Source: Selaginella moellendorffii (taxonomy: Eukaryota; Plantae; Lycopodiophyta). From it: a stretch of 64,000 bases of DNA. Positions 4,115-27,527 of the stretch are shown piece by piece. Under the pieces are notes generated by a model. It made no database searches. It was not told the origin of the DNA and saw only the letters and a program-made list of their open reading frames with translations. The translations under genes and the position numbers were made by a program. Within the stretch, counting starts at the first letter, position 1. Every line of letters starts with the position of its first letter. Location of the stretch: positions 1,235,193-1,299,192 of the forward strand of contig NW_003314280.1 in NCBI RefSeq assembly GCF_000143415.4. Direction: 5' to 3'.

Positions 4115-6088
4115 TTACACTCCTCTTCGGCTAAGGAGGAGAGGCATGCCATGCTTTGGCGTTAGAGTAAGGCGCAGCACAGGGCTGTGCTGGTAACTTG
4201 GCGATATCTCGAAGCTAAACCTGTGGAGGATCATGGTCAGCGCAACCTTGGCCTCCATGAGAGCGAATCCTTGGCCGAGGCAAACCCGGGGCCCGTGAGA
4301 GAAGGGGAGAAAGGCAAACGGGTGCTTGGAGGCGTTGGCCACACCGTCAGCGAAGCGCTGTGGATTGAACTCGTTGGCATCTTCGCCCCACACTTCCTTG
4401 TCGTGGAGGATAGAGAGTATCGGCACGAGAACGCCGGTTCCCTCTGGAACAATCAAGTTTCCCAGCTTCGTGTCCTCCATGGCCGTGCGGACCAAGAACA
4501 CGGCCGGTGGATACAGCCGCAGCGTCTCGTTGAGCACCATTCCCACCTGGAAGAGAACGAGAACAATGAGAAACGAGAGGAGGAAATCTAGATCTTGCTC
4601 ACGATCTTTAGCTTGCTGGCTGCTTCTGAATCCGGGACGCCAGACTTACAAACCTCCAGCACCTCAGCTCGAGCACGCTCTTGCCAAGTCGGGTTTGTGG
4701 CGAGCAGCATCATCGCCCAGGTTATCAGCTTGGCTGTGGTTTCATGGCCAGCGACGTAAAAGGTCTTGCATTCCTCTATCAGGCTCTCGCTCGTGAATGC
4801 CAGCGCTGGCTTGATCCCGCTGCCGCTGAAGCTGCGGCTCGAGTCCACTTCGTCGAGCATCAAACCGAGAAGATCGCTGCCATAGTTGCTGCTAGCACCC
4901 GAGTCTTTGAGCTGCTGTCGCGCATGGACGATCTCGAGCAGCAGATTGTTCACCTTTTTCTGTCCGTTTCTTATGGCTCGGTTAAGCTCGCTGAAAGGAT
5001 TCATGCTGCATACAAACCTCCCAGCGATCAAATGGGAACAAAACCATGAACGGGAATACCTCTCAATCCATGGCTTGGAGAATCTCTGTAGGATAATCGC
5101 GGTCAGCTCTTGAACGAGCTCCAGAACGCGACGGCCCTGCGCATGGCCGCTTCCAAATGCTGTCCGAGATATCACGTCCGCAGTCAGCTCAGTGATGGGC
5201 TCGCTTACCTCCACTTCTACACCACTGCTATCTCGCGTTAGAGCAAGCCATTTGTCCAGCATCTCGGATACGCAGTCTACCATAGTCCCGACCATTCCCT
5301 GCGAAGAAAGAAGAAGAGGCGAAGGTCGAGAGAAGCTCGAGAAGAGAGAGGTTTGGCCACCACCTTTATCTTCTCCTGGTAGAAGGCGGGCGACATGATA
5401 TGGCGGCGAAAGGCCCACTCGTCTCCATTCACAACGACGAGGCCTCTGCCAATGACTTGCATGAGGAACTTCTGCTGGATGGAGGAGCGCCAAAACACCC
5501 CGGATTTGTTGTAGAGCACGTCCTTGACCATGTCCAGGTCGGTGAGAACGATGCGAGGCTCGTAACCCCACCACATCATCATCGGAGACCCTGGTGATGA
5601 TCGAAAGACAAACAATCAAAGATCAACAGAGAAACACTTCCAAGACAAACAAAGAGCTAGCGAATTTTCGAAAGAAAGAAACTCTGGTGATGATCGAAAA
5701 AAAAAAACAATCAAAAAGTGCCAGAGACACAGAAGAGGAAATCCTCCAAGAGCAACAAAACAAACAAGTAGCGAATTTTGTCGAGAAAGAAAGAAGAGCA
5801 AAGGAACATACCATAGATTTTTTCCCAGTGTAGCGAGTGAGGCTGGGCGTAGCCAACGATGTCGTGAGAGATGCCCTCCATGCAGCGCTCCTCGGCGGCG
5901 GCCCGCATTTCCATCATCTCGCGGATGTTCCCGCGGAGGATGGACCGCGGAGGCCCTCCAATCCCCTGGCGGCGCAGCTTGGCCTCTAGAATCCATGGCT
6001 TCGCTACATAGTCTCTCACAAACCCAACCCAAGCGCCCCACGCAAGCAGCGGGAGGAGCAGCAGCGCCGCGATGAGCAGCAGCGCCAT
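4115..6088 (-). CDS. Cytochrome P450, CYP72 clan (CYP-1), 5 exons, 525 aa, apparently intact
   Basis: Exons 6088-5812, 5590-5364, 5298-5060, 5005-4603, 4546-4115, all GT-AG, total 1578 nt. TM anchor, GPP hinge, AGHETT, ETLR, PQRF, heme motif FSHGPRVCLG. Confidence 0.93.
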
Positions 6089-6474: not shown

Positions 6475-8225
6475 TCATATTTTCTCCATGACGAGAGGAA
6501 GACCGTGGCAAGGTCTGAGCGTAACTTTGAACACCGGGCAGTGGCGATACGATGGCGACAACCGAAACCGGAAGCGCTGGAGAATGGTGGCCAAGGCGAT
6601 CTTGGCTTCCATGAGTGAAAAGGACTGGCCGACGCACACCCGGGGGCCAAGCGAAAACGGCATGAACGCGTTCGGGTGCTTGGACGCCTTGGTGACACCA
6701 TCCTTGAAACGCTCCGGATTGAACTCGTGGGCGTCCTCCCCCCAGAGCTCCTTGTCGTGGTGGATGGCGAGGATTGGAAAGGAGAGCCCCGCTCCCTTTG
6801 GGACGAGGATAACTCCCAGTATGGTGTCCTCGAAGCACGATCGCATCATCGACACCACCGGTGGATACAGGCGGAGAGTTTCGTGGAGGATCATGTTGAT
6901 CTAGCCATGAGAAAGAAAGCTCGTGAAACTCGAAAGTAACGTAAAACCTTTACCAGCTTGAGCTTGCTGATTGAATCGGCTTCTGGAGTGGCACCTTCGC
7001 AGACTTCCTGGGCCTCGGCGCGAGCGCGCTCCTGCCATTCCGGGTGCAAAGCAAGCAGCATTATGGACCAGGTGAGCAGAGTTGCCGTCGTCTCGTGGCC
7101 AGCAAAGTAGAAAGTCTTGCACTCCTCCATCACGGCCCGATCGTCAAAAGAAGAGTTTCCACACTCGGCAAGCATCAACCCCAGCAAGTCATGACTCTGG
7201 CCACTCTGAGCTCGCCGCTCCTTGATCAGGCCAAGCAGCAGCGAGTCGAGGTCGCTGTAGAGCTTTCTCAATCGAAAGTTTGCTGGAAACGGAAGGAATC
7301 TGCGGTCAGAAAATCGTGTTATAGTACGTAAACGAAAGAGATTTGATCACCTTTTGCCTGGTACATAGTTGTATCGATCGACCTTGGAAAGCTCCTCTGG
7401 GATTGCTCTCAAGGTTTCGAAGACCTTCTGGCCTTTGAGATAGCTGCTTCCGAATGCCGTGTGGGAGATAATGTCTGCGGTTAGCTTTGAGAATTCACTG
7501 CTCATTTCAATCTCGGGCTGCTCGCGGAGCGCTTCTTCCCACCTGTCTAGCATCTCGAGCGCGCACAGTCCGATACGGGGCACCATTTTCTGGTTTGTAT
7601 GACCAAGTAGTGAAAGTTGATAAGAAGCAAAGAAAGAAAAAATGGAACCTTGAGCTTCTCTAGGTAGAAAGCTGGAGCCACAACACGTCGATGGTGGCTC
7701 CACTCGTTACCATTCACGGCAATGAGCCCTCTGCCGATTATGGATGCGACTGCAGAAACCATCATGTCCGATTTCTCAAACTGAGTAACTTTCTTGGCAA
7801 GAACTTCTCTGATGAGCTCGGGCTCCGTGACCATGATCCTCGGCTCTGTCGCCCACCAGTAGAAATACATCTTTCCTGGGAAGAAATCCTCCAGAGTCTA
7901 ACTCAACTTACGATAGAAACGAAAAGAGAGACTAACCGTATTCCTTGGACCACTGGTGGTAATCCAGCAACACATGCTCCACAATATCGTGATTCAAGCC
8001 TGCCATGTCCCGCTCCTTGGGAGTGTCTCTCATCTTCATCACCTGGAGCATATTCCCGGCCAAGAAAGTCCTTGGCGGCCCCTGGATACCCTGGCTTCGA
8101 ATCCTTGTGTCGAGCGATCTTGGCTCCAGCCAATACCTGGTGACAATTGATCGCCATAGCTTCGCAACCAGTGCTAGCAACACGAGCAGCGCGCCCGTCC
8201 ACACTGCCTTGCCAATGCCCTCCAT
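6475..8225 (-). CDS. Cytochrome P450, CYP72 clan (CYP-2), 5 exons, 508 aa, apparently intact
   Basis: Exons 8225-7937, 7875-7649, 7589-7351, 7299-6954, 6900-6475, total 1527 nt. AGHETT, ETLR, PERF, FSLGPRVCVG. Confidence 0.93.
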
Positions 8226-8390
8226 TTCTCACAACAAACAAGTGACCCAATGTCAAAATTATCGAAGTTCCCGACGAGCAGGTCTCCACGTTCGAGAACG
8301 TGAGCACGACTAAACTTTGCTGCGGAGTAGCTTTCACTGATTGGGACGATTTGACGACTGCATTTTTAAATGCTATACAGGATTCTGTCA

Positions 8391-8470
8391 ACGAGTGAGT
8401 GACGAGCTCAGTATGATTACCTTGCTGCCAATGAGTGAGTGACAAGCTCAGTATGATTACCTTGCTGCCA
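8391..8470. repeat. 2 x 40-bp tandem repeat upstream of CYP-2
   Basis: acgagtgagtgacgagctcagtatgattaccttgctgcca / atgagtgagtgacaagctcagtatgattaccttgctgcca (2 mismatches). Confidence 0.9.
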
Positions 8471-8479
8471 GGAGAAATT

Positions 8480-10375
8480 ATTTGCAATGAGATTTTGGTG
8501 ACTCCTCTCAAAGAAGGATCCAAAACCTGTAGAAGATGATCAAGCTCAATATTTTTGGCAAGGTTTACCAAAGAGTGCATCCTTCTATGTGTGATGCATA
8601 CTTGCATTCGAACGGGTACGATTAATAAAAAATGCTGTTTAAAACATGTGAGTGAATTTCCATGTTAGGATGGCAAATCAGAGTCGGGTGAAGCCATTGG
8701 GAGTTCTTACAGGTGTGAAGATGGATGTAGTAGGGTTGAACTTTTACATGGATTTTGTGGTTTTTAGGATGAGTCTTGGTGAATTAACTTATCCATTGCT
8801 TCTAAGCCGACCTTGGTTGGTGCAAGCTGATGCTTCTCAATACTATCATAAAGGCTTGATGAGGATTCGAAGTGGAAATTTCAAGTGCAAGATTCAAGTT
8901 AGTGTTCAAGCAATGTCAAAGTCAAACCAGCCAGTGGAAATTGAGAGGGACGATAACAACAGTGATACTACTTCTGGCAGTGAGGAAGAGGAGAATTCTT
9001 GCTCTAATTCAGGTTCTAGTGATTGACTAAGAAGAGGATGAAGAAGCAGCTCTGGTCCAGAAAGAGAAGATGATAAATTATGCCAACCTAGCCTTGTCCT
9101 CTTTTGAGTGGGATTATAGCAGTGATCGTTTGAAGCATTGGTTATGGAAAGTGGTAGAAAAATCTTTTGCAATTTATGAAGAGCCAACAATATAGGTTGG
9201 AAAGGAGTTGAGATTTATCAAGCCTCCCGAGTTGATTAATTTGGATCTGGGGATGCTAGGAAGCTCTAGGGTGGTGACCAACTGGATCATGAGAAGCAGA
9301 TGAGTTTAGTGAAGTTGTTGTCTAACTATTGAGATATTTTTGCGTGAACCTACAAGGACATGAAAGGGATTGATCCAGCTCTAGCTGTCCATAGGATTCC
9401 TCTAGTTCCTGGTGCTGTGCCAGTGTGTCAACAACCCTATCACTCTAATCCCCATTACTCCAAAGCTATGAGAGAAGAGATTGAGAAGCTATTGTGAGTT
9501 GGTTTTATCTTTGAAGTGGAAGTTAGTGAGTGGCTTTCTCCAATTGTAGTCATCAAGAAGAAGAATGGTCAACTCCAAATTTATGTAGATTATAGAAAGC
9601 TGAATAATGTAACAAGAAAAGATGGCTTTCCATTGCCATTTATGGATACAATGCTGAATTTAGTTCCAGGCCATAGGCTCTATTTTTTTCCTGATGGTTT
9701 CAGTGGCTACAATCAAGTTTGAATAGCTGAAGAGGATCAGCTTAAAACTACATTCGCTGAGTGGGGATGATACACATATCAAGTGATGCCTTTTGGCTTA
9801 ACAAATGTGCTTGAGTTTTTAAAGAGTGGTAATAGTAGCCTTTCAACGTTTTATACAAGATTTCATGAAGGTATTTTTGGACGATTTTAGTGTGTTCACT
9901 GATGTTGAACAGCATGAGAAGAAGCTTGCTAGTTTCTTTGACAGGTGCAGAAAATTTGAAATTTCACTCAACCCTCTCCCAAGAAGGATTAACAATTGAT
10001 CCTAGTAAGATAAAAGTTATTTAGGCTTTACCAGTTGCAAGTTTTCTTGGGACATGTAAGATACCATTGCAGATTTGTGAGGAGATATGCTGAAAAAGTT
10101 TTGCTGTTGAAGGATGTGAAGTATGAGTGGAACAAGAAGTGTCAATAGGCTTTTGAAGAATTGAAGCAAACTTTGGTCACGGTCCCAATTTTGAAGATGC
10201 CAAATTGGTCTCGAGAATTCCATGCTTTGGCAGTGGCAATTGGTTCGGTAAGGAGTTTACTTTTTATATTGATCACCAGGCCTTGAAATATCTTATTTTG
10301 AAGCCATGCAAAATAGGTAAAGTGACTCATTGGTTGCTAATTTTATAGGAGTTCTAGTTTAAAACAGTTCTTAAG
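8480..10375 (+). mobile_element. Degenerate Ty3/gypsy element A (non-chromovirus, Athila/Tat-like), 5' part: protease region, RT, RNase H
   Basis: WLSPIVVIKKKNGQLQIYVDYRKLN, DGFSGYNQV, VMPFGL, VFLDDF, DHQALKYL. Many stops; cut at the inversion breakpoint. Confidence 0.85.
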
Positions 10376-12438
10376 TGTTTCAAATGATCCTCCAATGTTT
10401 CGCTGAAGACTAGAACATCGTCGATATATAGGACAACAAATGTGTCCAAATAATCTCCGAATATTTTATTCATCATAGTGCTGAACATTACCGAAGCATT
10501 GCATAACCCGAATGGCATGACAAGAAACTCATAAGATCCGTACCGAGTCTTAAAAGCTGTCTTCTTCACATCTTGATCCGCCACCCATATCTGATGATAC
10601 CCAAACCGCAAATTTAGTCGCGTAAAATACTTAGCCTTTAAGAGTTGGTCAAACAAGTCATCAATGCATGGCAAAGGATAATTGTTTTTAACCGTGATCT
10701 TGTTGAGTGCCTAATAATCAATACACATCCTCATGGTTCCATCCTTTTTCATAACAAAAAGGACCGGCGCTCCATAAGGTGATTTGCTTGGTTAGATATG
10801 ACCTTTGTCAAGAAGCTCTGTGAGTTGTTTCTTGAGTTCAGCCATCTCCTTGATGTTCAACCGATATAGAGCTTTCATAGGTGGTTTAGAACCCGAAATA
10901 ACCTCAATCCGATGATCAACCTCACGGCTAGGAGGTAGCCCTGGTGGCAAATCCTTCGGAAAGATATCTTGATTCCTCGCCAACAACTCCAATATCTTCT
11001 TTGGTACGGATCAACCCCGTCACCGATTCAAACTGTGTCACCAATACCCTCAGTTTCCATCATTTGAACCCAAAAGGTCTGACATCCCTTCTTAACTGCT
11101 ATTTGAGCGGCCCTCGCAATCTAGAACTTGGCATCCCAATCCTTTGAGGAGTGCTTTTGCAATTGGAAGGACATATCAGGATGTCCTTTTGACTTCAATA
11201 TGATATGACTTTGTCCAGCACTATAAATCCCTTTTATATATTTGTTGAAGAAGTCTATACTAAACACCATATGAAAATCTGGTATTTTCAACACTATCAA
11301 GTCCACTCTTTCTTTCCACTTGGATATTTTTATTGGAACATCACTCATAAACTTTCTGGCTACTTGCCCACCTTCCACAAACTGGAAGTGTATAGGTGAC
11401 ATTTGCTCAGCATTCAATCCTAACAACTTAACTAAGTCTTTAGATATCATATTGTGCATAGCTCCCGTGTCAATCATCACTCAGATTCGGTGTCCACGGA
11501 GAAAGCCTACCAGATACATCAACAGATTAGTGTTTGCATTGACTGCGAGAAAAGCTTGAGGAAAGCAACGAAAGTAACTCACCTCCTCTTTCTCATAATC
11601 TGCATTGACCAACTTGTCAACCCCTTCAGCTTCGCCACCACCGTCTTCCCTCAAGACATTAACCCGAGACCTTGTCTTATGCTTGTTGTGGCATTTCGAG
11701 GACTTATGTCCTAACTCTCCACAATGGAAGCAATGACCCACACTACCTGTTCCACTAGGAGTAGGTTTCGCAGGTTGCTGTTGCTTGTACCCACCAAGAG
11801 GAGGAACAGAGGGCCTAGGACCAGAAGTAGCTGTTGGTGGTCTCCAACCACCACCACCTTTGTTAACCATTGCTTGTGAGCCTCCAGAGTAGAACCTGCT
11901 TTCCACCCCCTATTTCTGGTCACCTTGTTTATTCCCAAAATTCCTATTCTTATCCGAGTTACCAGCATATGGTTGCTGATATTGTTCCATGAGCGAGTGA
12001 CTAAAGGCAACTTGTTGTGCTGCCTCCTTATACTCCAAGTATGTCTTCGGCTTAAACTTCAAAATCTCATTACGAGAAAGTGAACTTAAACCCTCCAGAA
12101 AATAACTCCGAGCATCTTCGTCACTCATATTTGCAATCATAATGTGCTTCTGAGCAAACGCATTAACGTAATGCATGAGATCCCCTTGCTGATTTAACCG
12201 CCGTAGCTCCATGCGAAGTCTCAAACCAAGATCATTCGGCAAGTATTCTTTACAAATATGAGACCGCATCTTGGTCCAACTTCTAGTCTGCCCTTTTTCA
12301 GCACAGACCTGGCACCACCAACTTTTGGCATGATCGGTGAGAAAGGATTGCGCACACGCAACTTTCGTATGATCATCTACGTCTACCGCTATGAAATAGT
12401 TTTCCATATCGTAGACCCAGTCTTCCAAAACTTGATAG

Positions 12439-12825
12439 TGTCAAGACCCCCAACAAGATCAAGACTGGAAAATGCAAAAGACAAAGAGAAAAGCTAGTGG
12501 AAACAAAGAAAAGGCCTTAGACTGGCGTTGATTCAGATTGTGGAGAAATGGAACAAGGCTAACCTATATATACTATAGGTTGATGAAGCTCCACCACTCT
12601 TGGATCGAGGACAGCCTAAATATAGCTGAGGTTGAGGAGGTGCCACATCAATATCAGGAATGTGGTTCGAGACTCAGGAATCGTACAGGAAATCAGAGAG
12701 TTGGGAATAGGGAAGTGTCTTGAGAGTCAGGAATAGGGAAGTGTCTCGAGAATCAGGAATGTGGTCTGCAGGTCAGGAATCCGGTGAGAGTCCGGAATGT
12801 GGCAAAAATTGGGGGATTCCTAATA
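12439..12825 (-). repeat. 3' LTR of element C
   Basis: Direct repeat of 17647-18042; contains ~26-bp subrepeats (gagagtcaggaatagggaagtgtctt). Confidence 0.93.
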
Positions 12826-15800
12826 GCACCCCCTCCTCAAGAACGAGTGGAACGAGGATGTGAATGAGAACGACGAGGAGGATGAGATGAGCTGTAAGGG
12901 ATGGGAGATGGAGAAAAAGAATGAGGACTGGGACGAGAAGGATAACGGCGGTAGAAGTCCTGAACAAGGTCAGGAGAATGAATCAGGTTGTCCGCAGGTT
13001 CCCAAGTGCGTTCTTCAGGCCCGTAACCCTTTCAGTTGACCAGATAGTAGAGTTTAGACCGTGAAATCTTGGAATCAAGGATGTCCTGAACCTCGTACTC
13101 AGACCCATCCTCGAGCTGCACTGGTGGAGGTGGAGGAATGACCCAATCGGGAATAGTACTGGGAATATAAGGCTCAAGGAGAGAGGAATGAAAAACGGGG
13201 TGAATTTGATATGAGGAGGGAAGTGCAAGGCGATAAGTGACAGGATTAATGATGGCAGTGATAGGGAAAGGACCGAGGCGTTTGAAATCAAGTTTTGGAC
13301 AGGGCCTGGTGGTGGAGATATTTTGCCAGAGGAGCCAGACTTTATCCCCGATATTGTAAGGGGGACAATCCTGACGATGGACATTGGCAAATGTTTTGTG
13401 AGATTCCTGAGCACGATGGAGGTGGAAGGAGATGGAGTTGTGGATTTCTTGGAGGTTGGAGACAAATGCCTCAGAGCGAGGATTTGAATGAGAGGATTCG
13501 GATGAAGAAGGAAGTGAGAGATTGAATCGGGGATTTCGGCCAGAGTTTGCAAAGAAGGGGGAAATTCGAAGAGAGGAGTGAACAAAGTTGTTATAGGAGA
13601 ACTCAGCAAGGGGAAGGATATCGAACCAGTTATCCTAATGATAGTTGATGAAACACCTCAAGAATTGTTCCAACGTCTGAATCGTTCGCTCGGACTGCCT
13701 ATCAGTTTGAGGATGATATGCCGAAGAGAGGTTGGCCTTCACTCCAAGCAGCTGCAAAAACCGTTTCCAGAAATGAGAGATGAACTGAGGCCCCCGATCC
13801 GAAACCACATCTATAGGAATCCCATGAAGTCAGAAAATTTCCCTGAATACCAGTTTTGCCATGTCCTCGCCCAAAAACTCCTTGGTACATGGCAAGAAGT
13901 GCGCCATCTTTGTGAAGCGATCCACCACGACTAAAATGCTGTTGAAGCCTCCAGAACTCGGAAGATCACTCAAAAAATCCATGGAGATGGATTCCCAAGG
14001 ACCTGAAGGGACCGGAAGGGAACAAAGCAAACCTGAAGGAAGGAGGTACCTTATTCTGGGCGCAAGTGTCACAGGAGGTAACAAAAGCTTTGATGTAGTC
14101 ATTCATGTGAGGCCACCAAAAGTCCCATGCAACTAGCTCATAGGTTTTCGCAATGCCAAAGTGACCAGCAATCGGGCTATCGTGGCACGCCATCAGGACC
14201 AACCTTCGAGCATCACCTTCAGGAATGTAAAGTTGCTCCCCACGGTATAATAAGCCATCTAAGAACTCAAACTCGTCAAATCGCCGGCAGTCGGGAGTCA
14301 CAGGGTGTCCAGCCTGAAGATGGGGGAAAATGTCGCTGGCGAGATCATCGGATTGAAGATCGTTTCTGATTGCATCCATCAAGGAGGAGTCCTGCGGGGC
14401 CAGGGAAATTGCCATAACTTGAAACCGATAAGGACCGAGGATAACTTGATCCTGTTGATCGAAGGCAGGATTACCAGGCCTGAGACTGAGATAGGAGCGC
14501 CTTGAAAGAGCATCAGGAAGGCCTTGAAGCTTTCCAGGTCTGTACTTGATAACAAAGTCAAACCGACTCAGGAATTGTGCCCACCTTGCTTGACGACGGC
14601 TTAAAACTCGGGAAGTGGCAAAGTACTCGAGATTTTTGTGATCCGTCCAGACTGTTGTTTGATGGCCCGCCCCCTCCAAGAAACGGCGCCACTCTCCAAA
14701 GGAATCCACGATGGCAAGGAGCTCCTTGTCGTGGATTTCGTAATTGATCTCCGCAGGCTGAAATTTCCGAGAATGGAAAGTGACCAGATGAAGTTCTTGA
14801 TCCGCTCCGAGTTGAGACAACACAGCACCGATGGCAAAGTTGGAGGCGTCAACCTCGATGAAGAAAGGTTGTGAGGAATCAGCATGGATCAAAACGGGAG
14901 CAGAACTGAAGGCTGCCTTGAGTGTGTCGAAGGCATACTGGGCAGCAGCAAACCAAGAGAAGGGAACATCCTTGCGAGTGAGATGTGTGAGAGGAAGGAC
15001 AATGTCAGAGTAATGATCAATGAATTTGCGGTAGAAGTTGGCAAAGCCAAGGAAAACCTGAATGTCCGACATTGATTATGGAGGCTCCCACTCGAGAATA
15101 GTCTTGACTTTGGCAGAATCCATCGTGATACCCTCAGAAGTGATAATGTACCCAAGGAACTCCACAGACTGCTAATCGAAGGAACATTTCTCAAGCTTCG
15201 CGTATAGGCCGTGTTCTCGCAGCTTCGCCAGCACCTTGCGTACATGTTCGTCGTGCTCCTCCTGAGTTTTTTAGTAGATGAGGATGTCATTGAGGTAGAT
15301 GATCACCATCTGATCAAGAAACTCCCGAAAGACATCGTTCACCACGTGTTGGAAAACTGCTAGAGCATTTCTCAAGCCAAATGGCATGAAAGTGTACTCG
15401 AAGTGGCCATAGCGGGTTCGGAACGCAGTCTTCCATTCATCACTAGGCCAGATCCAGATCAGGTTGTATGCGCCACGGAGGTCAATCTTGGTGAAGAAGC
15501 GGGCACCACCGAGGCGTTCCAACAGGTCTGAGATCAGGGGCAGCGGATAACAGTTCCAAACAATCACCTTGTTCAAACCTCGGTAATCAATGACTAGCTG
15601 CAAACTCCCATCCTTCTTCTTGACAAAGAAGACAGGCGCTCCAGCTGGGGACTGCGAATGCTAAATGTACCCCGAGGCAAGGTTCTCATCCACGTACTCT
15701 TTGAGGGCCTTAAGCTCGAACGGGGATAACCCGCAGATAGGCCCCCACGGAGGTGACGCTCCTTCCTGTAAATCAATGGGATAATCATAAGCCAATGAAC

Positions 15801-16559
15801 AGGCAGTACACTAGCTTTTTTCTTGTCAAACACATCCCCAAAATCATGATACTTCTCAGGAAGACTGACAGGAAAAACATGCAAAGCAAAAACGAAAATA
15901 GGTTCTTCATGAAGGAGTTCTTTCATAGTGATTGTGGAGATAGGAGGAGGTGTACGACTAAATGGAATGATGAGACGAGGATACTGTCCAGTGTAAGATG
16001 GAAGAGAGGAAAAAGAAGAGGGTGAAAACTTCGTAGAGTCAGGAATAGAACCCCGATTTAAGTTTAGGGAACTTTTCCTGATTCGGACTCGATGAACAGC
16101 AGGGGAAGCCATGGGAGATGGTGATGTGGGAGAGATGAGCTGTAATTCCTTCCAACAAATTTGAGGCTGATGTAGTTGGAACCAAGGAAGACCGAGCACC
16201 ACAGAGGAGGACTTGCTGTTGATGATGTTGAAGGCGATATCGGTGACAGTGGACCCGATGTGTACTCGAACGGGCAACATTTCCCTAAGTCCAGAAGATG
16301 GAGACACAAAATGCCCGCCAATGCCTTCAACCCTCAGATCCCGTATGGTAGGAGAAAGAGGAACATGATGTTGGGCAGCAAAGTCCGTGTCCATGAAGCA
16401 GGAAGTTGCACCCGAGTCCAGTAGCGCCAAAGCCTTGAGTCCTGATTGTCCGGTGAAAGAAAGGAGATATGGGACGCGGAAGTTGCGGGAATTACTGGTG
16501 GCTTTGATGAAAGGTGGTGAGGAGCTTGATAAAGAAGAAAAGTGATTTTTATTCGGGGA

Positions 16560-16604
16560 GTCCAAATAGACAGCTCCTACTCTGTTTGGACAGGGTCGTT
16601 TCCC
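16560..16604 (-). promoter_or_regulatory. Putative -1 ribosomal frameshift signal at the gag/pol junction of C
   Basis: G GGA AAC heptamer in gag phase (16598-16604), 6-nt spacer, then an 11-bp stem with one mismatch (16560-16591). pol is in the -1 frame. Confidence 0.75.
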
Positions 16605-17629
16605 AACTGCAACAGAGGTGGACTTTGAGGCAGAGTGAACTCGAGCAGTCGAGGAGGCTTCTTGGGACACACAGCTGCTTTGTGATTAGGATCAACATAG
16701 TAAAGGCAAAGATTATGAGATATTCGACGTTGCTTCTCAGTAGGACTCAACTTCCCTCTAATGAGTCGGGGAGTACCAGAAATATCCATCGGGACCAGAG
16801 CAGTAGGTTCAGGAGTATGCCCCGAAGACTCAAGCTGGGATTCCTAAGTTTGGGACGGAAAAACAGCGGCGCGGCAACTTTCCTAACGACATTCAAAGAG
16901 ACGATTGTCACATCGAACAGCTTTGGTGATGGCGTCCGACAGGTCCTTGGGATCCTCCATGGTGAGCAACAAATCCTTGACACCGTTGTTGAGGCCGAAA
17001 CGAAATTGGTCAATCAGGGCCCGCTTATCCCACTAAGTGTCCAAGGCAAGGAGTTGGAACTCTGCAGCGTAGATTGAGGCAGGACGAGACCCCTGAGAGA
17101 GACGTCTCATCTTTGTAGTAGCAACCCGAACCCGATCTATCTCACCAAAACATGCTTCAAGCTTCTCTTTGAACAATTGAAGATCCATCAGCTTCGGAAC
17201 CACGACCCCTTTCATGCTCTTCTCCAGAAGAGGAGAAAACCATGACAAAGCTGCACCTTCGAGCAATGTCCCAATCACGCCAACTTGAGACTCGGGAGTG
17301 GGGTACCGCTGATGTTGAAGTGCAAAGATCAGCTCCATTTGGTTCAAAAATTCGCGAAGCTCAGAATGCTTGCCTGAAATTTTCGCTGGGAAACTCACCT
17401 TCGGTTCAGGAACTTTGCTGGATCCCTGAGCCGAAAGTGAAGCAAGCTCCTGATGCATGCGAAGAAGGGTCGCCTTTAGCTTGGTATTCTCAGACTGGAT
17501 TTTTGTAAGGACTTCGGCAAAGAAATCAGGATGGCTTGGAGACTCCATCGGCAAGAAGAAAGGAAAAAAAAGGGGAAAAAAGACAAAGGCAATCAAATAA
17601 TCCAAACAAGCTAAAACAAAAGCAAAAAG

Positions 17630-17644
17630 CACAATCTGAATCAA
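17630..17644 (-). promoter_or_regulatory. Putative self-priming primer-binding site of C
   Basis: Starts 2 nt inside the 5' LTR boundary and lacks the TGG of a tRNA PBS. Perfect 15-nt complement of LTR positions 17736-17750. Confidence 0.75.
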
Positions 17645-17646
17645 AC

Positions 17647-18042
17647 TATCAAGACCCCCAACAAGATCAAGACTGGAAAATGCAAAAGACAAAGAGAAAA
17701 GCTAATGGAAACAAAAAAAAGGCCTTAGACTAGCGTTGATTCAGATTGTGGAGAAATGGAACAAGGCTAACCTATATATACTATAGGTTGATGAAGCTCC
17801 ACCACTCTTGGATCGAGGACGGCCTAAATATAGCTGAGGTTGAGGAGGCACCACATCAATATCAGGAATGTGGCTCGAGACTCAGGAATCGTACAGGAAA
17901 TTAGAGAGTCTTGAGAGTCAGGAATAGGGAAGTGTCTTGAGAGTCAGGAATAGGGAAGTGTCTCAAGAATCAGGAATGTGGTCTGCAGGTTAGGAATCCG
18001 GCAAGAGTCAGAAATGTGGCAAGAATTGGGGGATTCCTGACA
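17647..18042 (-). repeat. 5' LTR of element C
   Basis: Direct repeat of 12439-12825; TATA-like tract at 17773-17780. Confidence 0.93.
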
Positions 18043-18603
18043 GATAGTTCGGCATGCCTCTGAAGTTGGGTGGTTTCAGAGGCTTGAACTTTGAAACTCG
18101 TGCAACTGGGGGCGGCTGCAAAACTTCATCATCCTCAGAACTTGAGGAGGAGTCCGGTTGCTTAGGCTTAGCTGGTTTAGTTGCCTCAGCTTCTTTCTTC
18201 TTCTTTTTGTTCTCCTTCTTCAATTTGCAAATCTCCTTTCGCAAATTCTTGATCTCAACTTCTTGAGCCATACGTTACAATGCCACAGCATCTGGCTCTT
18301 CCTCTTTTGACTCGGCCTCAGCCTCTATTGCAACATTTCTAGCAGGAGTTTCCTCCTCTCGATTTGCTCGTCTAGAGGTTTCAGCGTCATCAACATGGTT
18401 CCTTTTCACCATCCCGCTAGCTGCATGCATGTCTCTATCAGTAACTGAACATGCTTACAACATTCTTACTGAATGGTGCAATCCAATTAATTTTACACAG
18501 GTCGCTTCGGATCTACTAGAAAAGTCTTTGCGTATGCAACTTGAGTTAGAAAATCCGACAAAAGTTGGATAGGAATCGCTGAAACAATTTCTCTGATACC
18601 AAA

Positions 18604-19539
18604 TGTAGCACACCTGAATTTGGAGCTGAACTCCAAGCCCGTTGCACTACAAAACGAGGATCCGGTACAATCCCACGAGCACCAGCTCCCCGTATCTAGC
18701 ACCTGCATGCAAAATGGTGTTAGACAAAGTCTGGCACAATTTTGATATACCGGTGGCCTAACACAAGGAGGAGGGTACCCCACCGACTAGAGCAGCATGG
18801 AGCTTGGGCTTAGACCCAAATTGGACGCAAAACAAGGAGCGACACAACCCAACAGGAGCCAAATTAATGTCTCAGGTGGTCGGATACATTCCAACCATTA
18901 TCCCTACTATATATTTGAAACCTCCCCCAACCCCCCCTCCCTCCCCAACCCCCCCCCCCCTACATGCTTTGGGCTTTCACCCGAAGCCTCCCTTAGTACC
19001 AGGAGTTAGTCTCTGGGACAAGCTTGAAACTTATTAAATATTAAATATAGAATGGCACTAGATTGCGAATTTGGACATGGAACGAACACTATTATGTTTG
19101 GGCTGATCTTTACATTCCGTCGATATGCCAAATGAGCTAATCTAGACACTTTCTATAAATAGCATTTGGGACTGAAATGAGACCAACACAAAAGACGTGA
19201 TAGCGAGGGTGTTTGACAGACACGGTAAACTATCATTCAGTGATATTAAGGGACTAGTCTTAATATGTGAGGGTTTTTGTCACTAACAAGTGCAAGACAA
19301 AACGAGACAGGAACTCTTTACCAAGCTAAGTATGCTTAGCTAATAGCACTTAGGAATTCCGTCCTTATGCTCGTTTGGTCTAAGTACACTTGAAATGCCC
19401 AGTTAACTCCACTAGCACAAAAGGGGCTACTAAAGGAATTCAACTATACCGACCTCCTGTCATCATGGCAGTAAGGAAAGAGTATCCGTAAGGACTAGCC
19501 GAAAAATATCTTTTGATACCCAAAGTTACATTTGTGACA
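18604..19539 (-). repeat. 5' LTR of element B
   Basis: TG...CA termini; reverse complement of 26589-27527; PBS adjacent. Confidence 0.92.
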
Positions 19540-19884
19540 CTATTTGTAACATTTGCATTTGAGTCCAATTTCATGAATTTGAGTTATAAATGTCTCTAAT
19601 TGCTGCCAAAAAGCTAAATCAATTTTACTGTCACAACAACCACATTATTAAAATTGAACAACATAGCTCTAAAACCTCCTCATTGAGAACACTAAGTCAC
19701 ACTTAATAATGACAATGACAATGAATGGGATGTCGGTCAATGACCGTCGTGTACCATTCTAAATGCATATATGCCCATCTCATTGGCATCTGGCCTCCGT
19801 CCAATTGAAAAATGCCACCTGGACTATGCCACGCGTGAGTTTCTTACGCAAGTAGAATATACTGTCACTTGTTTGTTGTGAGAA

Positions 19885-21642
19885 ATGGAGGGCATTGGCA
19901 AGGCAGTGTGGACGGGCGCGCTGCTCGTGTTGCTAGCACTGGTTGCGAAGCTATGGCGATCGATCGTCACCAGGTATTGGCTGGAGCCAAGATCGCTCGA
20001 CACAAGGATTCGAAGTCAGGGTATCGAGGGGCCGCCAAGGACTTTCTTGGCCGGGAATATGCTCCAGGTGATGAAGATGAGAGACACTGCCAAGGAGCGG
20101 GACATGGCAGGCTTGAATCACGACATTGTGGAACATGTGTTGCTGGATTACCACCAGTGGTCCAAGGAATACGGTTAGTCTCTCTTCTCGTTTCTATCGT
20201 AAGTTGAGTTAGACTCTGGAGGATTTCTTCCCAGGAAAGATGTATTTCTACTGGTGGGCGATGGAGCCCAGGATCATGGTCACGGAGCCCGAGCTCATCA
20301 GAGAAGTTCTTGCCAAGAAAGCTACTCAGTTTGAGAAATCGGACATGGTGGTTTCCGCAATTGTATCGATAATCGGCAGAGGGCTCGTTGCCTTGAATGG
20401 TGACGAGTGGAGTTACCATCGACGTGTTGTGGCTCCAGCTTTCTACCTAGAGAAGCTCAAGGTTGCATTTCTTTTTCTTTCCTTCTTCATATCAACTTTG
20501 ATCACTTCATAACAATCAGAAAATGGTGCCTCGTATCGGACAATGCGCGCTCGAGATGCTAGACAGGTGTGAAGAAACGCTCCGCGAGCAGCCCGAGATT
20601 GAAATGAGTGGTGAATTCTCAAAGCTGGCAGCAGACATTATCTCCCACACGGCATTCGGAAGCAGCTATCTCAAAGGCCAGAAGGTCTTCCAATTCTTGA
20701 GAGCAATCCCAGAGCAGCATTCCAAGATCGATCGATACAACTATTTGCCAGGCAAAAGGTGATCATCGTTTTATTCTAGCACGTACTATAACACGATCTC
20801 GTCATCGACCGTAGATTCCTTCCGTTTCCAGCAAACTTTCGATTGAGAAAGCTCTACAGCGACCTCGACTCGCTGCTGCTGGCCTTGATCAAGGAGCGGC
20901 GAGATCAGAGTGGCCAGAGTCATGACTTGCTGGGGCTGATGCTTGCCGAGGCTGGAAACTCTTCTTTCGACGATCGGGCCGTGATGGAGGAGTGCAAGAC
21001 TTTCTACCTTGCTGGCCACGAGACGACGGCATCTCTCCTCACCTGGTCTATGATGCTGCTGGCTTTGCATCCGGAATGGCAAGAGCGCGCTCGCGTGGAG
21101 GCTCAGGAAGCATTCGGCGGTGCCACTCCGGAAGCCGATTCAATCAGCAAGCTTAAGCTGGTAAGGTTTTGAGTCAATCCTTTCAAGTTTCATGAGCTCA
21201 AGATTAGTTTTTCTAGATCAACATGATCCTCCACGAAAGTCTTCGCCTGTATCCACCGGTGGTATTTTTCATGCGAGCATGTTTCGAGAACACAACACTG
21301 GGAGATATCCTTGTTCCAAAGGGAGTTGGGATCACGTTTCCAGTCCTTGCCATCCACCACGACAAGGAGCTCTGGGGGGAGGACGCCCACGAGTTCAATC
21401 CAGAGCGCTTCAAGGATGGCGTTGCCAAGGCGTCCAAGCATCCGAACGCGTTCCTGGCCTTCTCGCTCGGGCCCCGCGTGTGCGTCGGCCAGTCCTTTGC
21501 ACTCATGGAAGCCAAGATCGCCTTGGCCACCATTCTCCAGCGCTTCCGGTTTCGGTTGTCGCCATCGTATCGCCACTGCCCGGTGTTCAAAGTTACGCTC
21601 AGACCTCGCCACGGTCTTCCTCTCGTCATGGAGAAAATATAA
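19885..21642 (+). CDS. Cytochrome P450, CYP72 clan (CYP-3), 5 exons, 508 aa, close paralog of CYP-2
   Basis: Exons 19885-20173, 20235-20461, 20520-20758, 20815-21160, 21217-21642, same lengths as in CYP-2. AGHETT, ESLR, PERF, FSLGPRVCVG. Confidence 0.93.
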
Positions 21643-22379
21643 TGGTACCTGCAGCATCACCATGCCCATACTAGAAATTAGTAACCATACTAGTAACCTT
21701 ACTAGTATTATTTATTAATCCAATTAAATAATTGAAAGTTTATATATATAGACATGTTTAGAATTTATGGTAGAATAACCAGAATATACTACAAAGTGTT
21801 TATATTATAAACACGTTTATAAATTATAAATATAAAACTAATCTAAATAAATAACAACCTTTAAGTTTTAACAAAAACAAGAATGAAAACCTGAAAACTA
21901 GAAGTTCAACTAAAACCTTAAACTCATACTCCAAGAGCTACATAGGAACAAAAGCTTTTATTCCTTTCACAATTTAATTAAGACTTCAGTTAGCAGCTTA
22001 ATCCACTCTTGCCCACAGTGCAAGCACACTATACTCACTTGCTACTCACTGGATAACCTTGCTTGTTTTGCATATTGCCGCACTTAAATATGCTGTGTTA
22101 CCACATTGGCTCTACACTGTGCTCCATTGTTCTGCCTCTCCAACTCATGCAAAGCTCCACTTGTCATTCTTCTTTCTTCCCTAACTTCTTCTAATTTCAT
22201 TTCTTCTTGTAATGAACTCTTCCACTCCACGACTTGCCAACTCTTCAAATATTAAAAAAACAAAAGAAAATGCCATATCTTGACAATGTTTTATCACCGA
22301 CATCACCCCACCACTATACTTGGCCTTGAGGCACAAAAAAGGTTGTTCAAAGTATTTCTTCACACAATAACTATTCACT

Positions 22380-23718
22380 CACATTGGCAATAAGTTCTTT
22401 GTAAAATCCTGAAGTTGGACTGATCCATTTCCGACTGCCACTAGATACCCTGTCCAATGACACTTCAGCTTTCCAAGGCGTTTCCAATACTTCGAATTAT
22501 AGAGAAAAACTTTATCACCAACTAGAAACTCTTTCTTGTGCAAGTGCCAATTATGCCAAACTTTGCAACATTGTTGAATCACTACACGAGCTTGAAATGC
22601 CAAGAGCCGCCTCTCATCTAACTTATCCAGCTGCTGCAACCTGTTTTTGATAGCCCTGTCTCAGTCAAGATCATGTTCCATAGCTATACACAAAGATGGA
22701 ATTTCTAGCTCAATCGGCAATACTACTTCCTGTCTATACACCAGCTGAAACGGTGAAGCCTGTGTCATCACTTTGAAAGCCACCCTGTAAGCCCAAATTG
22801 CATCTAAAAGCCACTTGTCCCAATCTGTCCTGTTGGCTGAACAAGTCTTTAAAATAATATTGTGAAATATACTATTAGTCCGCTCAACCCAACCATTACA
22901 ACGAGGATAATATGGTGTCGATTTCCTATGAGCGACATTATACAGTTTTGTCAATGAAGCTACCATTTCATTCAGAAAATGAGAACCTTTGTCACTAACT
23001 AACTCTAAAGAACAACCAAACCTAGTAATGACTTGCTCATACAAGAATTTAGCAACTTTCCTGCCTATAACTTCCTTCAACGCTTTCACCTCAGCCCACT
23101 TGGTCACATAATCTGTATAAACTACAGTGAGTATGCTTGGAAGATGGAAGAGGTCCCACAAAATCAATTCCCCACTTCTCAAATGGTAAAACTGGAAGAA
23201 GTGATTGCAATGGTATCATATCATGTTGTGTCAACTCCCCCATCCTCTGATATGGATCACAACCTCACACATAATCTATAATATCTTTGTGCATAGTCAG
23301 CCACCAATAACCTGCTCTCTTCACCAACTTGACTATGTCCAAAATGTCCACCAACCAGTGAATCATGGCAAGAACATATAATTGAAGATACCTCATGTGA
23401 TAAAACACATCTCCTGAGCACACCATCATTTCCCACTCAATAAAACTACCTTGCAATAAGAGTAAATCATTGAGACTGAAGGAGTAATTGTTTCTTTTGC
23501 TTGCTTGAAAATTCTAGAGGATACTTGCCACTTGCCAAAAATTGCACTAACTCAGAATACCACTCATTCAACTTGAAAAATCTACTTGTTTAAGCTTTCA
23601 AGATCCACCTAAAACGATTTGCATCTGGTAGCTCATCATCGACACCTTTTTCTTCATCCACAATAAGAGTTAGCAACTGAGAAATATGATCTAGCATAGT
23701 ATGATATTGTCTAGGCTT
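22380..23718 (-). mobile_element. Element A, 3' part (end of RNase H and integrase), displaced by inversion
   Basis: KPRQYHTMLDHISQL...DDELPDA; DYVTKWAEVKAL..ITRFGCSLELVSDKGSHF..STPYYPRCNGWVERTN; GDKVFLYNS. Confidence 0.88.
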
Positions 23719-26700
23719 GGAGCTGGTGTTTCAGAAGTTGCGTGAACACAAACTGTATGCTAAGGAAAGTAAATGCGCTTTTGGTCAATTGCGCATAAAC
23801 TTTCTTAGACATATAGTTGGTGGTGGCGTGATTGAGGTCGATCTAAAGAAGGTGGAAGTGGTGAAATCCTGGGAAGTCCCGACCACTATATAAAATATTC
23901 ATTCCTTTCTCGGTTTGGCGGGATATTATTGCAAGTTTGTCTACAATTTTGCAAAAATTGCTCTTCCGTTGACTGAGTTGACGAAGAGTAGTATTCCATT
24001 TCATTGGACACCAGCTTGTCAGTGTGCTTTTGTATGGTTGAAGGAGATCTTGACTACAGTTCTTGTTCTTAGGATCCCAGATCTTGATAAACCCTTCGAA
24101 GTGCATTGTGATGCATCTGGTTATACTATTGGTGCCATATTGCAGCAAGATTGTGACAAAGTGGTTGGTATTACGCTAAGGTGATATGGTTGTCCCGTTG
24201 CGTTATATTCCAAGAAATTGGATGAAACTCAACGAAGATGGCCAACGCATGAGAAAGAAATGTTTGCTATAGTGTCAGCCCTAGAACACTGGAGACACTT
24301 ACTTGGGTGGACATACCAAGGTTTATACAAATAGTAACACACTAAACTACTTTGCTAAGCAGCTTAAGCTTATGCCAAAGCAAGATCATTGGCAAAAGAA
24401 GCTTGCTAGATATGACATTGAAATCATATATAAACTTGGTAAAGACAATATTGTCCCGGATGCATTGAGTCACCAAGCTCAGTTCCAGGCAATATCAGCA
24501 ATTAGTTCGGATTGGTTAGAGGACGTTCAGGCTTCATATGGAAGTGATCCATTGGCGAAGGCAATCTTATGCTGTGTGGGGTTGTTGAAGTAGGGCCTTG
24601 GTAGCGAAGCAACGAAAGTTGCTAATCGCACTAATGCGAAGCTTCACTTCTTAGTTCGGGATGGGCTTATATTCTACAAGCAAGAAAGATTGTATCTTCC
24701 CTCTAAGGATCTGCAGCAGTTGTTTCTGCAGGAACATTATGATGTTCCAGCAGCGGGACATGGTGGGAAGCAAAAGACTCTGGCTTCATTGAAAAAGGGA
24801 TTTTTCTGGTCTAGTATGGAAGGTGATGTAGCGGATTATTTCCGTTCCTGCCCTATATGCTAGCAATGTAAGCAGAACTGAGAAGCAGGCTGGAAAGTTG
24901 CAGTGCATTCCAGCACCGGCATGGCCATTTCAGAGTGTGACACTTGATTTCGTCACTTGCTTGCCGAAGTCTAAGAGTTATGATACTTTGATGGTGGTTG
25001 TGGATCGGTTGTCAAAAATTGCACACTTCATCCAATTGTGGGAACAGTAAATGCGAAACAAGCAGCAAAACTCTTTTTCCATGAAGTAGTGCGGGTTCGT
25101 GGTCTCTTGAAAAGATGATCTCAGATAGAGATTTGAGGTTTACGGGGAAGTTTTGGGAGACACTATTCCAATTGTTTGGTACCAAGTTAAAGTTTAGTAT
25201 GGCTTATCATCCTCAGACTGATGGGCAGACCGANNNNNNNNNNNNNNNNNNNNNNNNNNNNNNNNNNNNNNNNNNNNNNNNNNNNNNNNNNNNNNNNNNN
25301 NNNNNNNNNNNNNNNNNNNNNNNNNNNNNNNNNNNNNNNNNNNNNNNNNNNNNNNNNNNNNNNNNNNNNNNNNNNNNNNNNNNNNNNNNNNNNNNNNNNN
25401 NNNNNNNNNNNNNNNNNNNNNNNNNNNNNNNNNNNNNNNNNNNNNNNNNNNNNNNNNNNNNNNNNNNNNNNNNNNNNNNNNNNNNNNNNNNNNNNNNNNN
25501 NNNNNNNNNNNNNNNNNNNNNNNNNNNTCGATGTGATAAGGATCAGCATCGTCGGGATGTATCCTATCAAGTGGGAAATCAGGTGTGGCTATCTTCCCAG
25601 AATTTGAACATTAAGGGTTCTCTGTCTCGGAAGCTCTTGCCGAGATATGTTGAACCTTATCGGGTGTTGAAACACATTGGTGATGTATCCTATCGGTTGG
25701 ATCTTCCTACAGAGATGTCCCATGTTCATAATGTATTTCATGCCAATCTCTTGGCTCCTTACACTATGGATGTTGTGCAGTGCAAGAAGATTTGTCCGCC
25801 ACCAGATGTTGTGGAAGGTGAACCAGAATATGAAGTTGAAGCTATATTGGATGCTCAGTCTCGAAGACAGGCTCATGCAAAGGAATATCTCGTTAAATGG
25901 AAAGGTTACCCATCTTGTGAATCAACTTGGGAACCCCTTAGGAATCTTACCCATGCTCATGTGTTTGTCACGGAGTATGAGAATCATAATAAAGATTAGC
26001 TTTTGTAAAATTTGTAATAATCTTGCACATTAATAAATAATATATTTCTATAAATCAAAGTGTCATTTCTCTCGTTCATTAGTACTTGGGTCAGTTTTGG
26101 CAAGCTGACTTCGGCACTTCGGTGCATGGGTCCAATCCATAACCATGGGGATAACTATTATAGACTGATCACAAGTCCCCACCTTTCTCTCGATGCCTAA
26201 CTTTTGAACCGGGGTGTGGTCGTGTAAACAACTTAATCTACCAGTTTATAATAGTTGTCTAAATCTTCTTGCTCAGGGGCAATTGGGCCTCTGGCCTTCT
26301 CCCTATGTCCTTGCGGGCAGGGATGTATCATTCCTTTGTAAGCCAAGTGGTACTCGGAGCAGCCAGAGTGGTTAACTCCATTAGTCATTTCCTTGTCGGT
26401 GATGGCCGGAGGGTGTCTGAGTCTTAACGTCTTTGGACATAGAGGAGAGGTCGTTCCATAACTCATTTAAGTCAGTGTGTTTCTCACATAGTGTGCTTTC
26501 CGTTAACTTTCAGAGTTGTTTCCTTGACAGTTTGCTAGACTCGGGTATACATCGACAAGGATGTCGATCTTCCCCAAGGGGGGGAGAGTGTCGCGAATAT
26601 GACTTTGGGTATCGAAAGATACTTGTTGGCTAGTCCTTACGGACACTCTTTCCTTACTGTCATGACAGCAGGATGTCGGTACAGTTGGATCCCTTTAGTA

Positions 26701-27527
26701 GCCCTTCTTGTGCTAGTGGAGTTAATTGGGCATTTCGAGTGTACTTAGACTGGACGAGCATAAGGACGGAATTCCTACGTGCTATTAGCTTAGCCCGGTA
26801 AGGAGTTCCCATCTCGTTTTGTCTTGCACTTGTTAGTGACAAAAACCCTTGCGTATTGAGATTAATCCCTCAATATCACTGGATGATAGCTTACCATGTC
26901 TGCCAAACACCCTTGCTATCATGTCCTTTGTGTTGGTCTCATTTCGGTCCCAAATGCTATTTATGGAAGGAGTTCCCGTCTTGTTTTGTCTTGCGCTTGC
27001 TAGTGACAAACCGCCCTCACATATTGAGACTAGTCCCTCAATATCGATGGATGATAACTTCACTTANNNNNNNNNNNNNNNNNNNNNNNNNNNNNNNNNN
27101 NNNNNNNNNNNNNNNNNNNNNNNNNNNNNNNNNNNNNNNNNNNNNNNNNNNNNNNNNNNNNNNNNNTGTTTTCTTCAGAGGGGGGGGGGGGGGGGGGCTA
27201 TGGGGGGTTCCAAATCGTATAGTAGAGATAGTGGTTGGAATGCATGTTCGACCACCTGAGATATTAGTTTGGCTCCCATTGGGGCTGTGTCGCTCCTTGT
27301 TCTGTGTCCGACTTGGGTCTAAGCCCAAGCTCCACACTGCTCTAGTCGGTGGGGTACCTTCCTCCTTGCGTTAGGCCACTGGTATGTCAAAATTATGCCA
27401 GACTCTGTCTGACACCATTTTGCGTGCAAGTGCTGGATACGGGGAGCTGGTGCTCGTGGGATTGTACCGGACCTCGTTTCGTAGTGCAATGGGCTTGGAG
27501 TTCAGCTCTAAATTCAAGTGCGCTACA
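23716..27527 (+). mobile_element. Element B, 3' half: C-terminal RT, RNase H, integrase, chromodomain, ~0.6-kb 3' UTR, PPT, 3' LTR
   Basis: [63 protein letters not shown] 26576-26588; LTR 26589-27527 followed by AATAG. Confidence 0.92.

What the first reader, a model, noticed from the sequence alone, without database searches (positions are those of the whole stretch)
10373..23718. ~13.3-kb inversion with breakpoints in two different retrotransposon pol genes; it flipped CYP-3
Inverting at the 3-bp microhomology AAG (10373-10375) / CTT (23716-23718) does four things. It restores element A in frame (..FKTVLK|PRQYHTMLDHISQL) and element B in frame (..DHLKH|LELVFQKLREHKLYAK). It makes B's LTRs direct repeats with matching TSD AATAG (rc of 19540-19544 equals 27528-27532). 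It puts CYP-3 on the same strand as the other P450s. Both junctions appear lossless and need no long homology, suggesting end-joining repair of two breaks; the event post-dates B's insertion.
Basis: seen in the sequence. Interest (0 to 1): 0.75.

Follow-up and report, generated by a model that had tools for sequence, protein, structure and literature searches.

The report
Clean 13-kb inversion splitting two retrotransposons
In a spikemoss (Selaginella moellendorffii) P450 gene cluster, a 13.3-kb stretch was cut out and re-inserted backwards without losing a base, splitting two dead retrotransposons and flipping one apparently intact P450 gene; it is a well-documented but ordinary kind of chromosome rearrangement.

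Summary
Window 10376-23715 lies inverted relative to its flanks.

- **Element A** is an LTR-less Ty3/gypsy fragment. Its left part ends at 10375 (+) and its right part starts at 23715 (-).
- **Element B** is a complete Ty3/gypsy element. It runs on the minus strand down to 10376 and resumes on the plus strand at 23716.
- **Junction fit.** Read with X at each break, both elements align without gaps across their junctions to independent intact polyproteins (A 13 of 13 alignments, B 26 of 35).
- **B's termini.** Its LTRs now face each other. Its 5-bp target duplication (AATAG) matches only if the segment is flipped. PBS and PPT sit where expected.
- **CYP-3** is on the plus strand while CYP-1 and CYP-2 are on the minus strand. 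It looks intact.
- **Breakpoints.** There is no long homology, hairpin, transposon end or assembly gap at either one.

The most likely mechanism is two double-strand breaks rejoined by end joining. The 3-bp "microhomology" is expected by chance in 6% of random break pairs, so it adds little.

An assembly artefact is therefore unlikely but not excluded.

This is a known kind of event; a human inversion with clean breaks in L1 elements is a close analogue. The scan has noted other clean inversions elsewhere in this genome.

The parts
4118..6031 (-). CYP-1, a CYP72-clan-like P450 outside the inversion
   Evidence: Pfam p450 on the ORF at 4588-5619; tblastn of P0391/P0002
6481..8225 (-). CYP-2, a P450 outside the inversion. 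It is now an inverted repeat of CYP-3 (6474-8246 against 19864-21643, 91-96% identity)
8652..10375 (+). A-left: protease, RT and RNase H part of an LTR-less, degraded Ty3/gypsy fragment. It ends at the left junction
   Evidence: tblastn of polyproteins; Pfam RVT_1 and RT_RNaseH traces
10373..10375 (.). Left junction J1: AAG, 3 bases shared by both partners. The break lies somewhere in 10372|10373 to 10375|10376
10376..23715 (.). The inverted segment (13,340 bp, with 3 bp of ambiguity at each end)
10376..12438 (-). B-left: gag, protease and RT up to just past the YIDD box (RVT_1 positions 21-167)
12439..18042 (-). Element C: a younger Ty3/gypsy element nested in B's gag region. LTRs are about 95% identical. 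TSD GATAG at 12434-12438 and 18043-18047
18043..18603 (-). B leader and start of gag. A PBS-like TGGTATCAGAGA lies 2 bases after the 5' LTR (rc of 18590-18601)
   Evidence: the match of this PBS to initiator tRNA-Met is from my own knowledge
18604..19539 (-). B 5' LTR (TG..CA), now inverted relative to the 3' LTR
19540..19544 (-). B target-site duplication, 5' copy (CTATT, which is the reverse complement of AATAG)
19885..21636 (+). CYP-3, the flipped P450. It has no stops in the exons and dN/dS is 0.26 against CYP-2 over 313 codons
22343..23715 (-). A-right: linker and integrase part of element A. It starts at the right junction
23716..23718 (.). Right junction J2: CTT, the 3 shared bases
23716..26588 (+). 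B-right: end of RT, RNase H, integrase, and the PPT AAGGGGGGGAGAG at 26576-26588. An N gap lies at 25234-25527
26589..27527 (+). B 3' LTR (TG..CA; N gap at 27067-27166)
27528..27532 (+). B target-site duplication, 3' copy (AATAG)

Best explanation
This is a real, balanced 13.3-kb chromosomal inversion in the Selaginella moellendorffii genome.

Inferred ancestral order: CYP-1(-), CYP-2(-), element A(+), CYP-3(-), about 340 bp, then element B(+) with C nested in it, if C had already inserted (its timing relative to the inversion cannot be told).

Two double-strand breaks occurred. One was in A, between RNase H and integrase. The other was in B's reverse transcriptase, about 15 codons after the YIDD box. 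The excised middle piece was re-ligated in reverse orientation by end joining, with no base lost or added. Three bases (AAG/CTT) happened to be shared, or helped to align the ends.

Shown: the reciprocal junctions, their losslessness at codon resolution, and the order of events (B inserted first, the inversion came later).

Inferred: the repair pathway, and that the event exists in the plant and not only in the assembly.

Consequences: CYP-3 keeps its own 340-bp upstream region and downstream flank, so its expression need not change. However, the CYP-2/CYP-3 pair and B's LTRs became inverted repeats. That blocks unequal crossing-over between the two P450 copies and creates substrates for further homology-driven flips.
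For: - Translations at both junctions.
- Gapless alignment of the X-joined halves to independent polyproteins: A 13 of 13, B 26 of 35.
- Collinear query coordinates of A-left then A-right in more than 30 polyproteins.
- The references closest to A-right's integrase (39-52% identity) are also closest to A-left's RT (37-53%) and more distant from B-left's RT (25-36%).
- B-left stops at RVT_1 position 167 of 205.
- B's LTRs are inverted, with TG..CA ends, PBS and PPT, and AATAG matching only after flipping. The chance of that 5-bp match is 1 in 1024.
- CYP-3 is on the opposite strand to CYP-1 and CYP-2.
- No inverted repeat of 10 bp or more within 150 bp of either junction, and no long repeat at the breakpoints.
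- Both junctions lie inside one gap-free contig, 1-25233.
- Clean end-joining inversions with breaks in retroelements are documented, for example HsInv0379 (PMC4591017).
Against: - There is no independent DNA.
- No near-identical protein fragment crossing J1 exists in the protein collection.
- No second copy of A or B in the window gives base-level proof of the ancestral junctions.
- The assembly is a gapped draft: four N runs, two of them inside B.
- The 3-bp microhomology is within chance, P = 0.06, so the sub-pathway (classical versus microhomology-assisted joining) is open.
Confidence: 0.78

Rival explanations
1. Assembly artefact: the 13.3-kb piece was mis-oriented when the draft genome was assembled, and the plant carries the un-inverted order.
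For: The window is a gapped draft, with N runs at 25234-25527, 27067-27166 and two more. The region is 87% retrotransposon. No independent DNA could be examined.
Against: Both junctions are inside one gap-free contig. They join two different element families at only 3 shared bases, where an assembler has no repeat to slip on. The two junctions are exactly reciprocal with no base lost, which chimeric clones or reads would not produce. The repeats that could mislead an assembler (CYP-2/CYP-3 and B's LTRs) are not at the breakpoints.
Confidence: 0.07
2. Replication-based template switching (FoSTeS/MMBIR type): a stalled fork switched strands twice at microhomologies and copied the segment backwards.
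For: Three shared bases at both junctions. The scan's notes report small flips at short inverted repeats elsewhere in this genome (unchecked notes).
Against: Such events usually leave duplications, deletions or templated insertions. Here nothing is gained or lost in either element. The microhomology is no longer than chance gives. There are no nearby inverted repeats to prime a fold-back.
Confidence: 0.08
3. Enzyme-made staggered cuts with compatible 3-base overhangs (a topoisomerase, integrase or nuclease acting at AAG/CTT), exchanged and ligated as a reciprocal sticky-end swap.
For: A lossless exchange with the same 3 bases kept once at each junction is what compatible 3-base overhangs would give (inference).
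Against: There is no element terminus, recombinase site or repeat at the junctions. The breaks are not at LTR tips, so the integrase-type events noted elsewhere by the scan do not apply. Blunt joining explains the data equally well, and the 3 bp may be chance.
Confidence: 0.04
4. Homologous (NAHR) or transposon-driven (alternative transposition) inversion.
For: Both breakpoints lie in Ty3/gypsy pol genes.
Against: In the ancestral order A and B were in direct orientation, and the breaks are at non-homologous positions (the RNase H/integrase linker versus RT). Only 3 bases are shared. No DNA-transposon end or new target duplication sits at either junction.
Confidence: 0.02

Closest known systems
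HsInv0379, a human 415-kb polymorphic inversion made by non-homologous end joining (PMC4591017)
   Same: Clean breaks with no insertion or deletion. Both breakpoints lie inside retroelements (L1s of different subfamilies). The ancestral order was inferred from abruptly interrupted element copies. NAHR was excluded.
   Different: It is human, 30 times longer and has no microhomology. It was confirmed by PCR and reads in thousands of individuals and has a shown effect on genes. None of that has been done here.
Inversions induced by two nuclease cuts in Arabidopsis
   Same: Two simultaneous double-strand breaks on one chromosome, repaired by end joining, give inversions of kilobases to megabases, often with scarless junctions.
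   Different: Those are engineered, with known cut sites. Here the cause of the breaks is unknown.
NAHR inversions between inverted repeats, the main class discussed for plants (review PMC13516404)
   Same: The outcome is a balanced inversion in a repeat-rich region.
   Different: NAHR needs long inverted homology at the breakpoints, and none is present here. Instead the event created two new inverted-repeat pairs (CYP-2/CYP-3 and B's LTRs) that could support later NAHR.
Other clean small inversions noted by this scan in the same genome (s1-332880, s1-431164, s1-402830; unchecked notes)
   Same: Same species, with precise flips that restore reading frames when reversed.
   Different: Those are 0.26-4 kb, inside genes, and some are at short inverted repeats. 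This one is 13.3 kb, lies between two retroelements, and has no inverted repeat.

Membership tests
Simple balanced inversion by two-break end joining | Two reciprocal junctions, each joining sequences that were formerly on opposite strands of two continuous units | tested here: met
   A and B are each split into a + half and a - half at the two junctions
Simple balanced inversion by two-break end joining | No or minimal loss or gain at the junctions, with 0-4 bp microhomology | tested here: met
   Gapless alignments across both X-joined junctions with frames kept. There is 3 bp of ambiguity, which chance gives in 6% of cases. Exactness to the base could not be tested for lack of intact family copies.
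Simple balanced inversion by two-break end joining | No long inverted homology at the breakpoints | tested here: met
Simple balanced inversion by two-break end joining | The junctions exist in the organism's DNA (reads, PCR, second assembly) | not testable with these tools
No plant genome or read collection is on hand.
NAHR inversion | Inverted repeats of high identity spanning both breakpoints | tested here: not met
   Only 3 bases are shared. The inverted repeats in the region (CYP-2/CYP-3, B's LTRs) lie away from the breakpoints and are products of the flip.
Transposon-mediated (alternative transposition) inversion | An element terminus at one breakpoint and a new target duplication | tested here: not met
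   Both sides of both junctions are internal pol sequence, with no extra bases
Replicative template switching (FoSTeS/MMBIR) | Copy-number change or templated insertion at the junctions | tested here: not met
   Nothing is duplicated or missing in A or B at the junctions
Ty3/gypsy LTR retrotransposon (element B) | Direct LTRs with TG..CA, PBS after the 5' LTR, PPT before the 3' LTR, a 5-bp target duplication, and the order gag-PR-RT-RH-IN | tested here: met
   Every feature is present, but only if 10376-23715 is read in reverse. As the sequence stands, the LTRs are inverted.
Ty3/gypsy LTR retrotransposon (element A) | LTRs and a target duplication | tested here: not met
   No LTR pair flanks A. 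It is a truncated PR-RT-RH-IN fragment with Ty3/gypsy domain order and homology.

The most novel reading that the evidence does not exclude
The inversion is carried by only one of the two haplotypes of the sequenced plant, and it is one instance of an unusually high rate of scarless inversions in S. moellendorffii; the scan holds 74 notes that mention inversions in this genome. If so, it would be a natural, base-resolved example of end-joining inversion that turns tandem P450 duplicates into an inverted pair and locally suppresses unequal crossing-over and recombination in a metabolic gene cluster.
Probability: 0.15. Interest if true: 0.5.

Novelty: new member of a known kind. Interest (0 to 1): 0.3.

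Why it matters
The two split retroelements act as built-in witnesses. They fix both breakpoints to the base, give the direction of the change, and show that nothing was lost. That makes this a tidy natural example of end-joining inversion in an early-diverging vascular plant.

The event also changes the recombination landscape of a P450 tandem array. CYP-2 and CYP-3 can no longer lose or gain copies by unequal crossing-over, but they can now drive further flips.

It does not reveal a new mechanism, and the flipped gene keeps its own flanks, so no large functional effect is expected.

Tried and rejected
- **Other haplotype or assemblies.** I tried to fetch them through the look-up of encoding contigs with P0001.
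- **Independent protein fragments crossing J1, or near-identical B-family copies.** The best hits were only 66-67% identical, so there was no independent witness.
- **A second copy of A or B inside the window,** for base-level proof of the ancestral junctions. None was found.
- **Pfam on the 58-residue start of B-right alone.** No hit even at E = 10, because the piece is too short. The X-joined alignments replaced this test.
- **Hairpins or inverted repeats near the breakpoints.** None.
- **LTRs for element A.** None.
- **Microhomology as evidence for a particular pathway.** Rejected: 3 bp or more arises in 6% of random break pairs.
- **Re-inverted sequence.** Exons were compared one by one.
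Full report
**Source of the window**

Exons at 8225-7935, 7876-7649 and 4546-4118 are 100% identical to the Selaginella moellendorffii protein SELMODRAFT_97810 (P0391, EFJ26611.1, on a 2.3-Mb scaffold). Its allele SELMODRAFT_186869 (P0001) differs at six residues and lies on a 352-kb scaffold, which I take to be the other haplotype. The window has four N runs: 25234-25527, 27067-27166, 52437-52536 and 56879-57026. None is at or inside the claimed inversion, and both junctions lie in the gap-free stretch 1-25233.

**Layout**

| Feature | Coordinates | Strand | Notes |
|---|---|---|---|
| CYP-1 | 4118-6031 | - | P450 |
| CYP-2 | 6481-8225 | - | P450 |
| A-left | about 8652-10375 | + | protease, RT, RNase H |
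| B-left | 10376-12438 | - | gag, protease, RT |
| C | 12439-18042 | - | Ty3/gypsy, TSD GATAG, LTRs about 95% identical |
| B leader and PBS | 18043-18603 | - | |
| B 5' LTR | 18604-19539 | - | |
| CYP-3 | 19885-21636 | + | P450 |
| A-right | 23715 down to about 22343 | - | linker, integrase |
| B-right | 23716-26588 | + | rest of RT, RNase H, integrase, PPT |
| B 3' LTR | 26589-27527 | + | |

**Checking the observation**

For B, the minus-strand frame ends with [17 protein letters not shown] plus two bases. The plus strand from 23716 completes that codon and goes on LELVFQKLREHKLYAKESKCAF, which is the normal continuation of a Ty3/gypsy RT. Pfam places B-left at RVT_1 positions 21-167 of 205.

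For A, FKTVLK on the plus strand continues as PRQYHTMLDHISQL on the minus strand.

I did not build the rejoined elements. Instead I read each one through with X at the break: X for B's split codon, and X for A's AAG codon and its stops. I aligned these to 68 polyproteins of 600 residues or more, taken from an exhaustive HMMER search with A's integrase piece.
- All 13 alignments that span A's junction are gapless within 12 residues of it. They place it inside the conserved LLLQEFxFxVxYKPGxxNxxADxLS motif.
- 26 of 35 alignments spanning B's junction are gapless within the same range.

Since both frames and both motif spacings are kept, none of the four ends lost or gained bases, at codon resolution.

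A-left and A-right are collinear in more than 30 references. The references nearest to A-right's integrase are also nearest to A-left's RT and farther from B-left's RT.

**Independent support from B's termini**

- The two LTRs align from TGTC to CTACA but in opposite orientation.
- The PBS-like TGGTATCAGAGA follows the 5' LTR and a purine tract precedes the 3' LTR.
- CTATT at 19540-19544 is the reverse complement of AATAG at 27528-27532.

An LTR element cannot insert with inverted LTRs, so one breakpoint must lie inside B. The sequence puts it at 10376/23716.

**CYP-3**

It is on the opposite strand to CYP-1 and CYP-2. Exon by exon it has no stops. Against CYP-2 it gives dS 0.16 and dN/dS 0.26 over 313 codons, so it looks like a working gene. 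It moved together with its 340-bp upstream region and its downstream flank.

**Mechanism**

NAHR is excluded. In the ancestral order A and B were direct, the breaks are at non-homologous pol positions, and only 3 bases are shared.

There is no transposon terminus, filler, duplication or nearby hairpin.

Two double-strand breaks with end joining is the simplest fit.

A 3-bp overlap arises in 6% of random break pairs drawn from these same elements, so it does not argue for microhomology-mediated joining.

That both breaks fall in retroelements needs no special cause, because about 87% of 8.2-27.5 kb is retroelement.

**Timing**

- B's LTRs differ by K2P 0.12-0.155.
- C's LTRs differ by 0.054.
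- CYP-2 and CYP-3 differ by 0.091.

The inversion is younger than B's insertion. Its order relative to C cannot be told, because C lies wholly inside the segment.

**Artefact?**

Unlikely. The junctions are in gap-free sequence. They join different families at 3 bases, and they are exactly reciprocal. The repeats that could mislead an assembler are elsewhere.

It is not excluded, though.

**Comparison with known cases**

Clean end-joining inversions with breaks inside retroelements are documented. HsInv0379 in humans was analysed with the same logic (PMC4591017). Reviews of plant structural variation stress NAHR and transposons (PMC13516404).

The scan's own notes list other clean inversions in this genome. 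They are unchecked and I did not use them as evidence. This is therefore a new, well-resolved instance of a known kind.

- The halves and X-at-break reads answered the question.
- Joined P450 exon models were not sent to any tool.

Noticed in passing
window 4118-8225: The public gene model SELMODRAFT_97810, and its allele SELMODRAFT_186869, joins the first three exons of CYP-2 (residues 1 to about 250) to the last exons of CYP-1 (about 251-529). On their own, CYP-1, CYP-2 and CYP-3 each look like complete five-exon P450 genes, so the model is probably a fusion artefact. No separate protein for CYP-3 turned up in the protein collection.
   Followed up: partly
window 6474-8246 and 19864-21643: Homology between CYP-2 and CYP-3 (91-96%) stops abruptly 21 bp upstream of the start codon and a few bases after the stop, so the duplicates share no promoter or flank. 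Possible causes are gene conversion confined to the gene, or flanks replaced by element insertions.
   Followed up: no
window 8247-10375 and 21644-23715: Element A has no LTRs, gag or target duplication. It is a truncated PR-RT-RH-IN fragment that fills the space between two P450 genes.
   Followed up: partly
window about 26990-27066, next to the N run 27067-27166: B's 3' LTR does not align with the 5' LTR for about 90 bases just before the gap. That stretch resembles an earlier part of the same LTR. This could be an internal duplication or a local misassembly at the gap edge.
   Followed up: no
window 26086-26588 and 50392-50917: The last 500 bp of B's internal region, before the PPT, match a stretch at 50.4-50.9 kb at 70% identity. 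That stretch lies inside the region another note calls a Mutator-like element.
   Followed up: no
window 3022-3777: A PPR-repeat ORF on the plus strand lies between P450 copies on the minus strand.
   Followed up: no
window 10354-10674 (-): Read through J1, B's RT frame continues by chance as HLRTVLN before a stop. This mimics the usual RT continuation (HLxxVL), so some database RT fragments show 100% query coverage. It could mislead an annotator into missing the junction.
   Followed up: no
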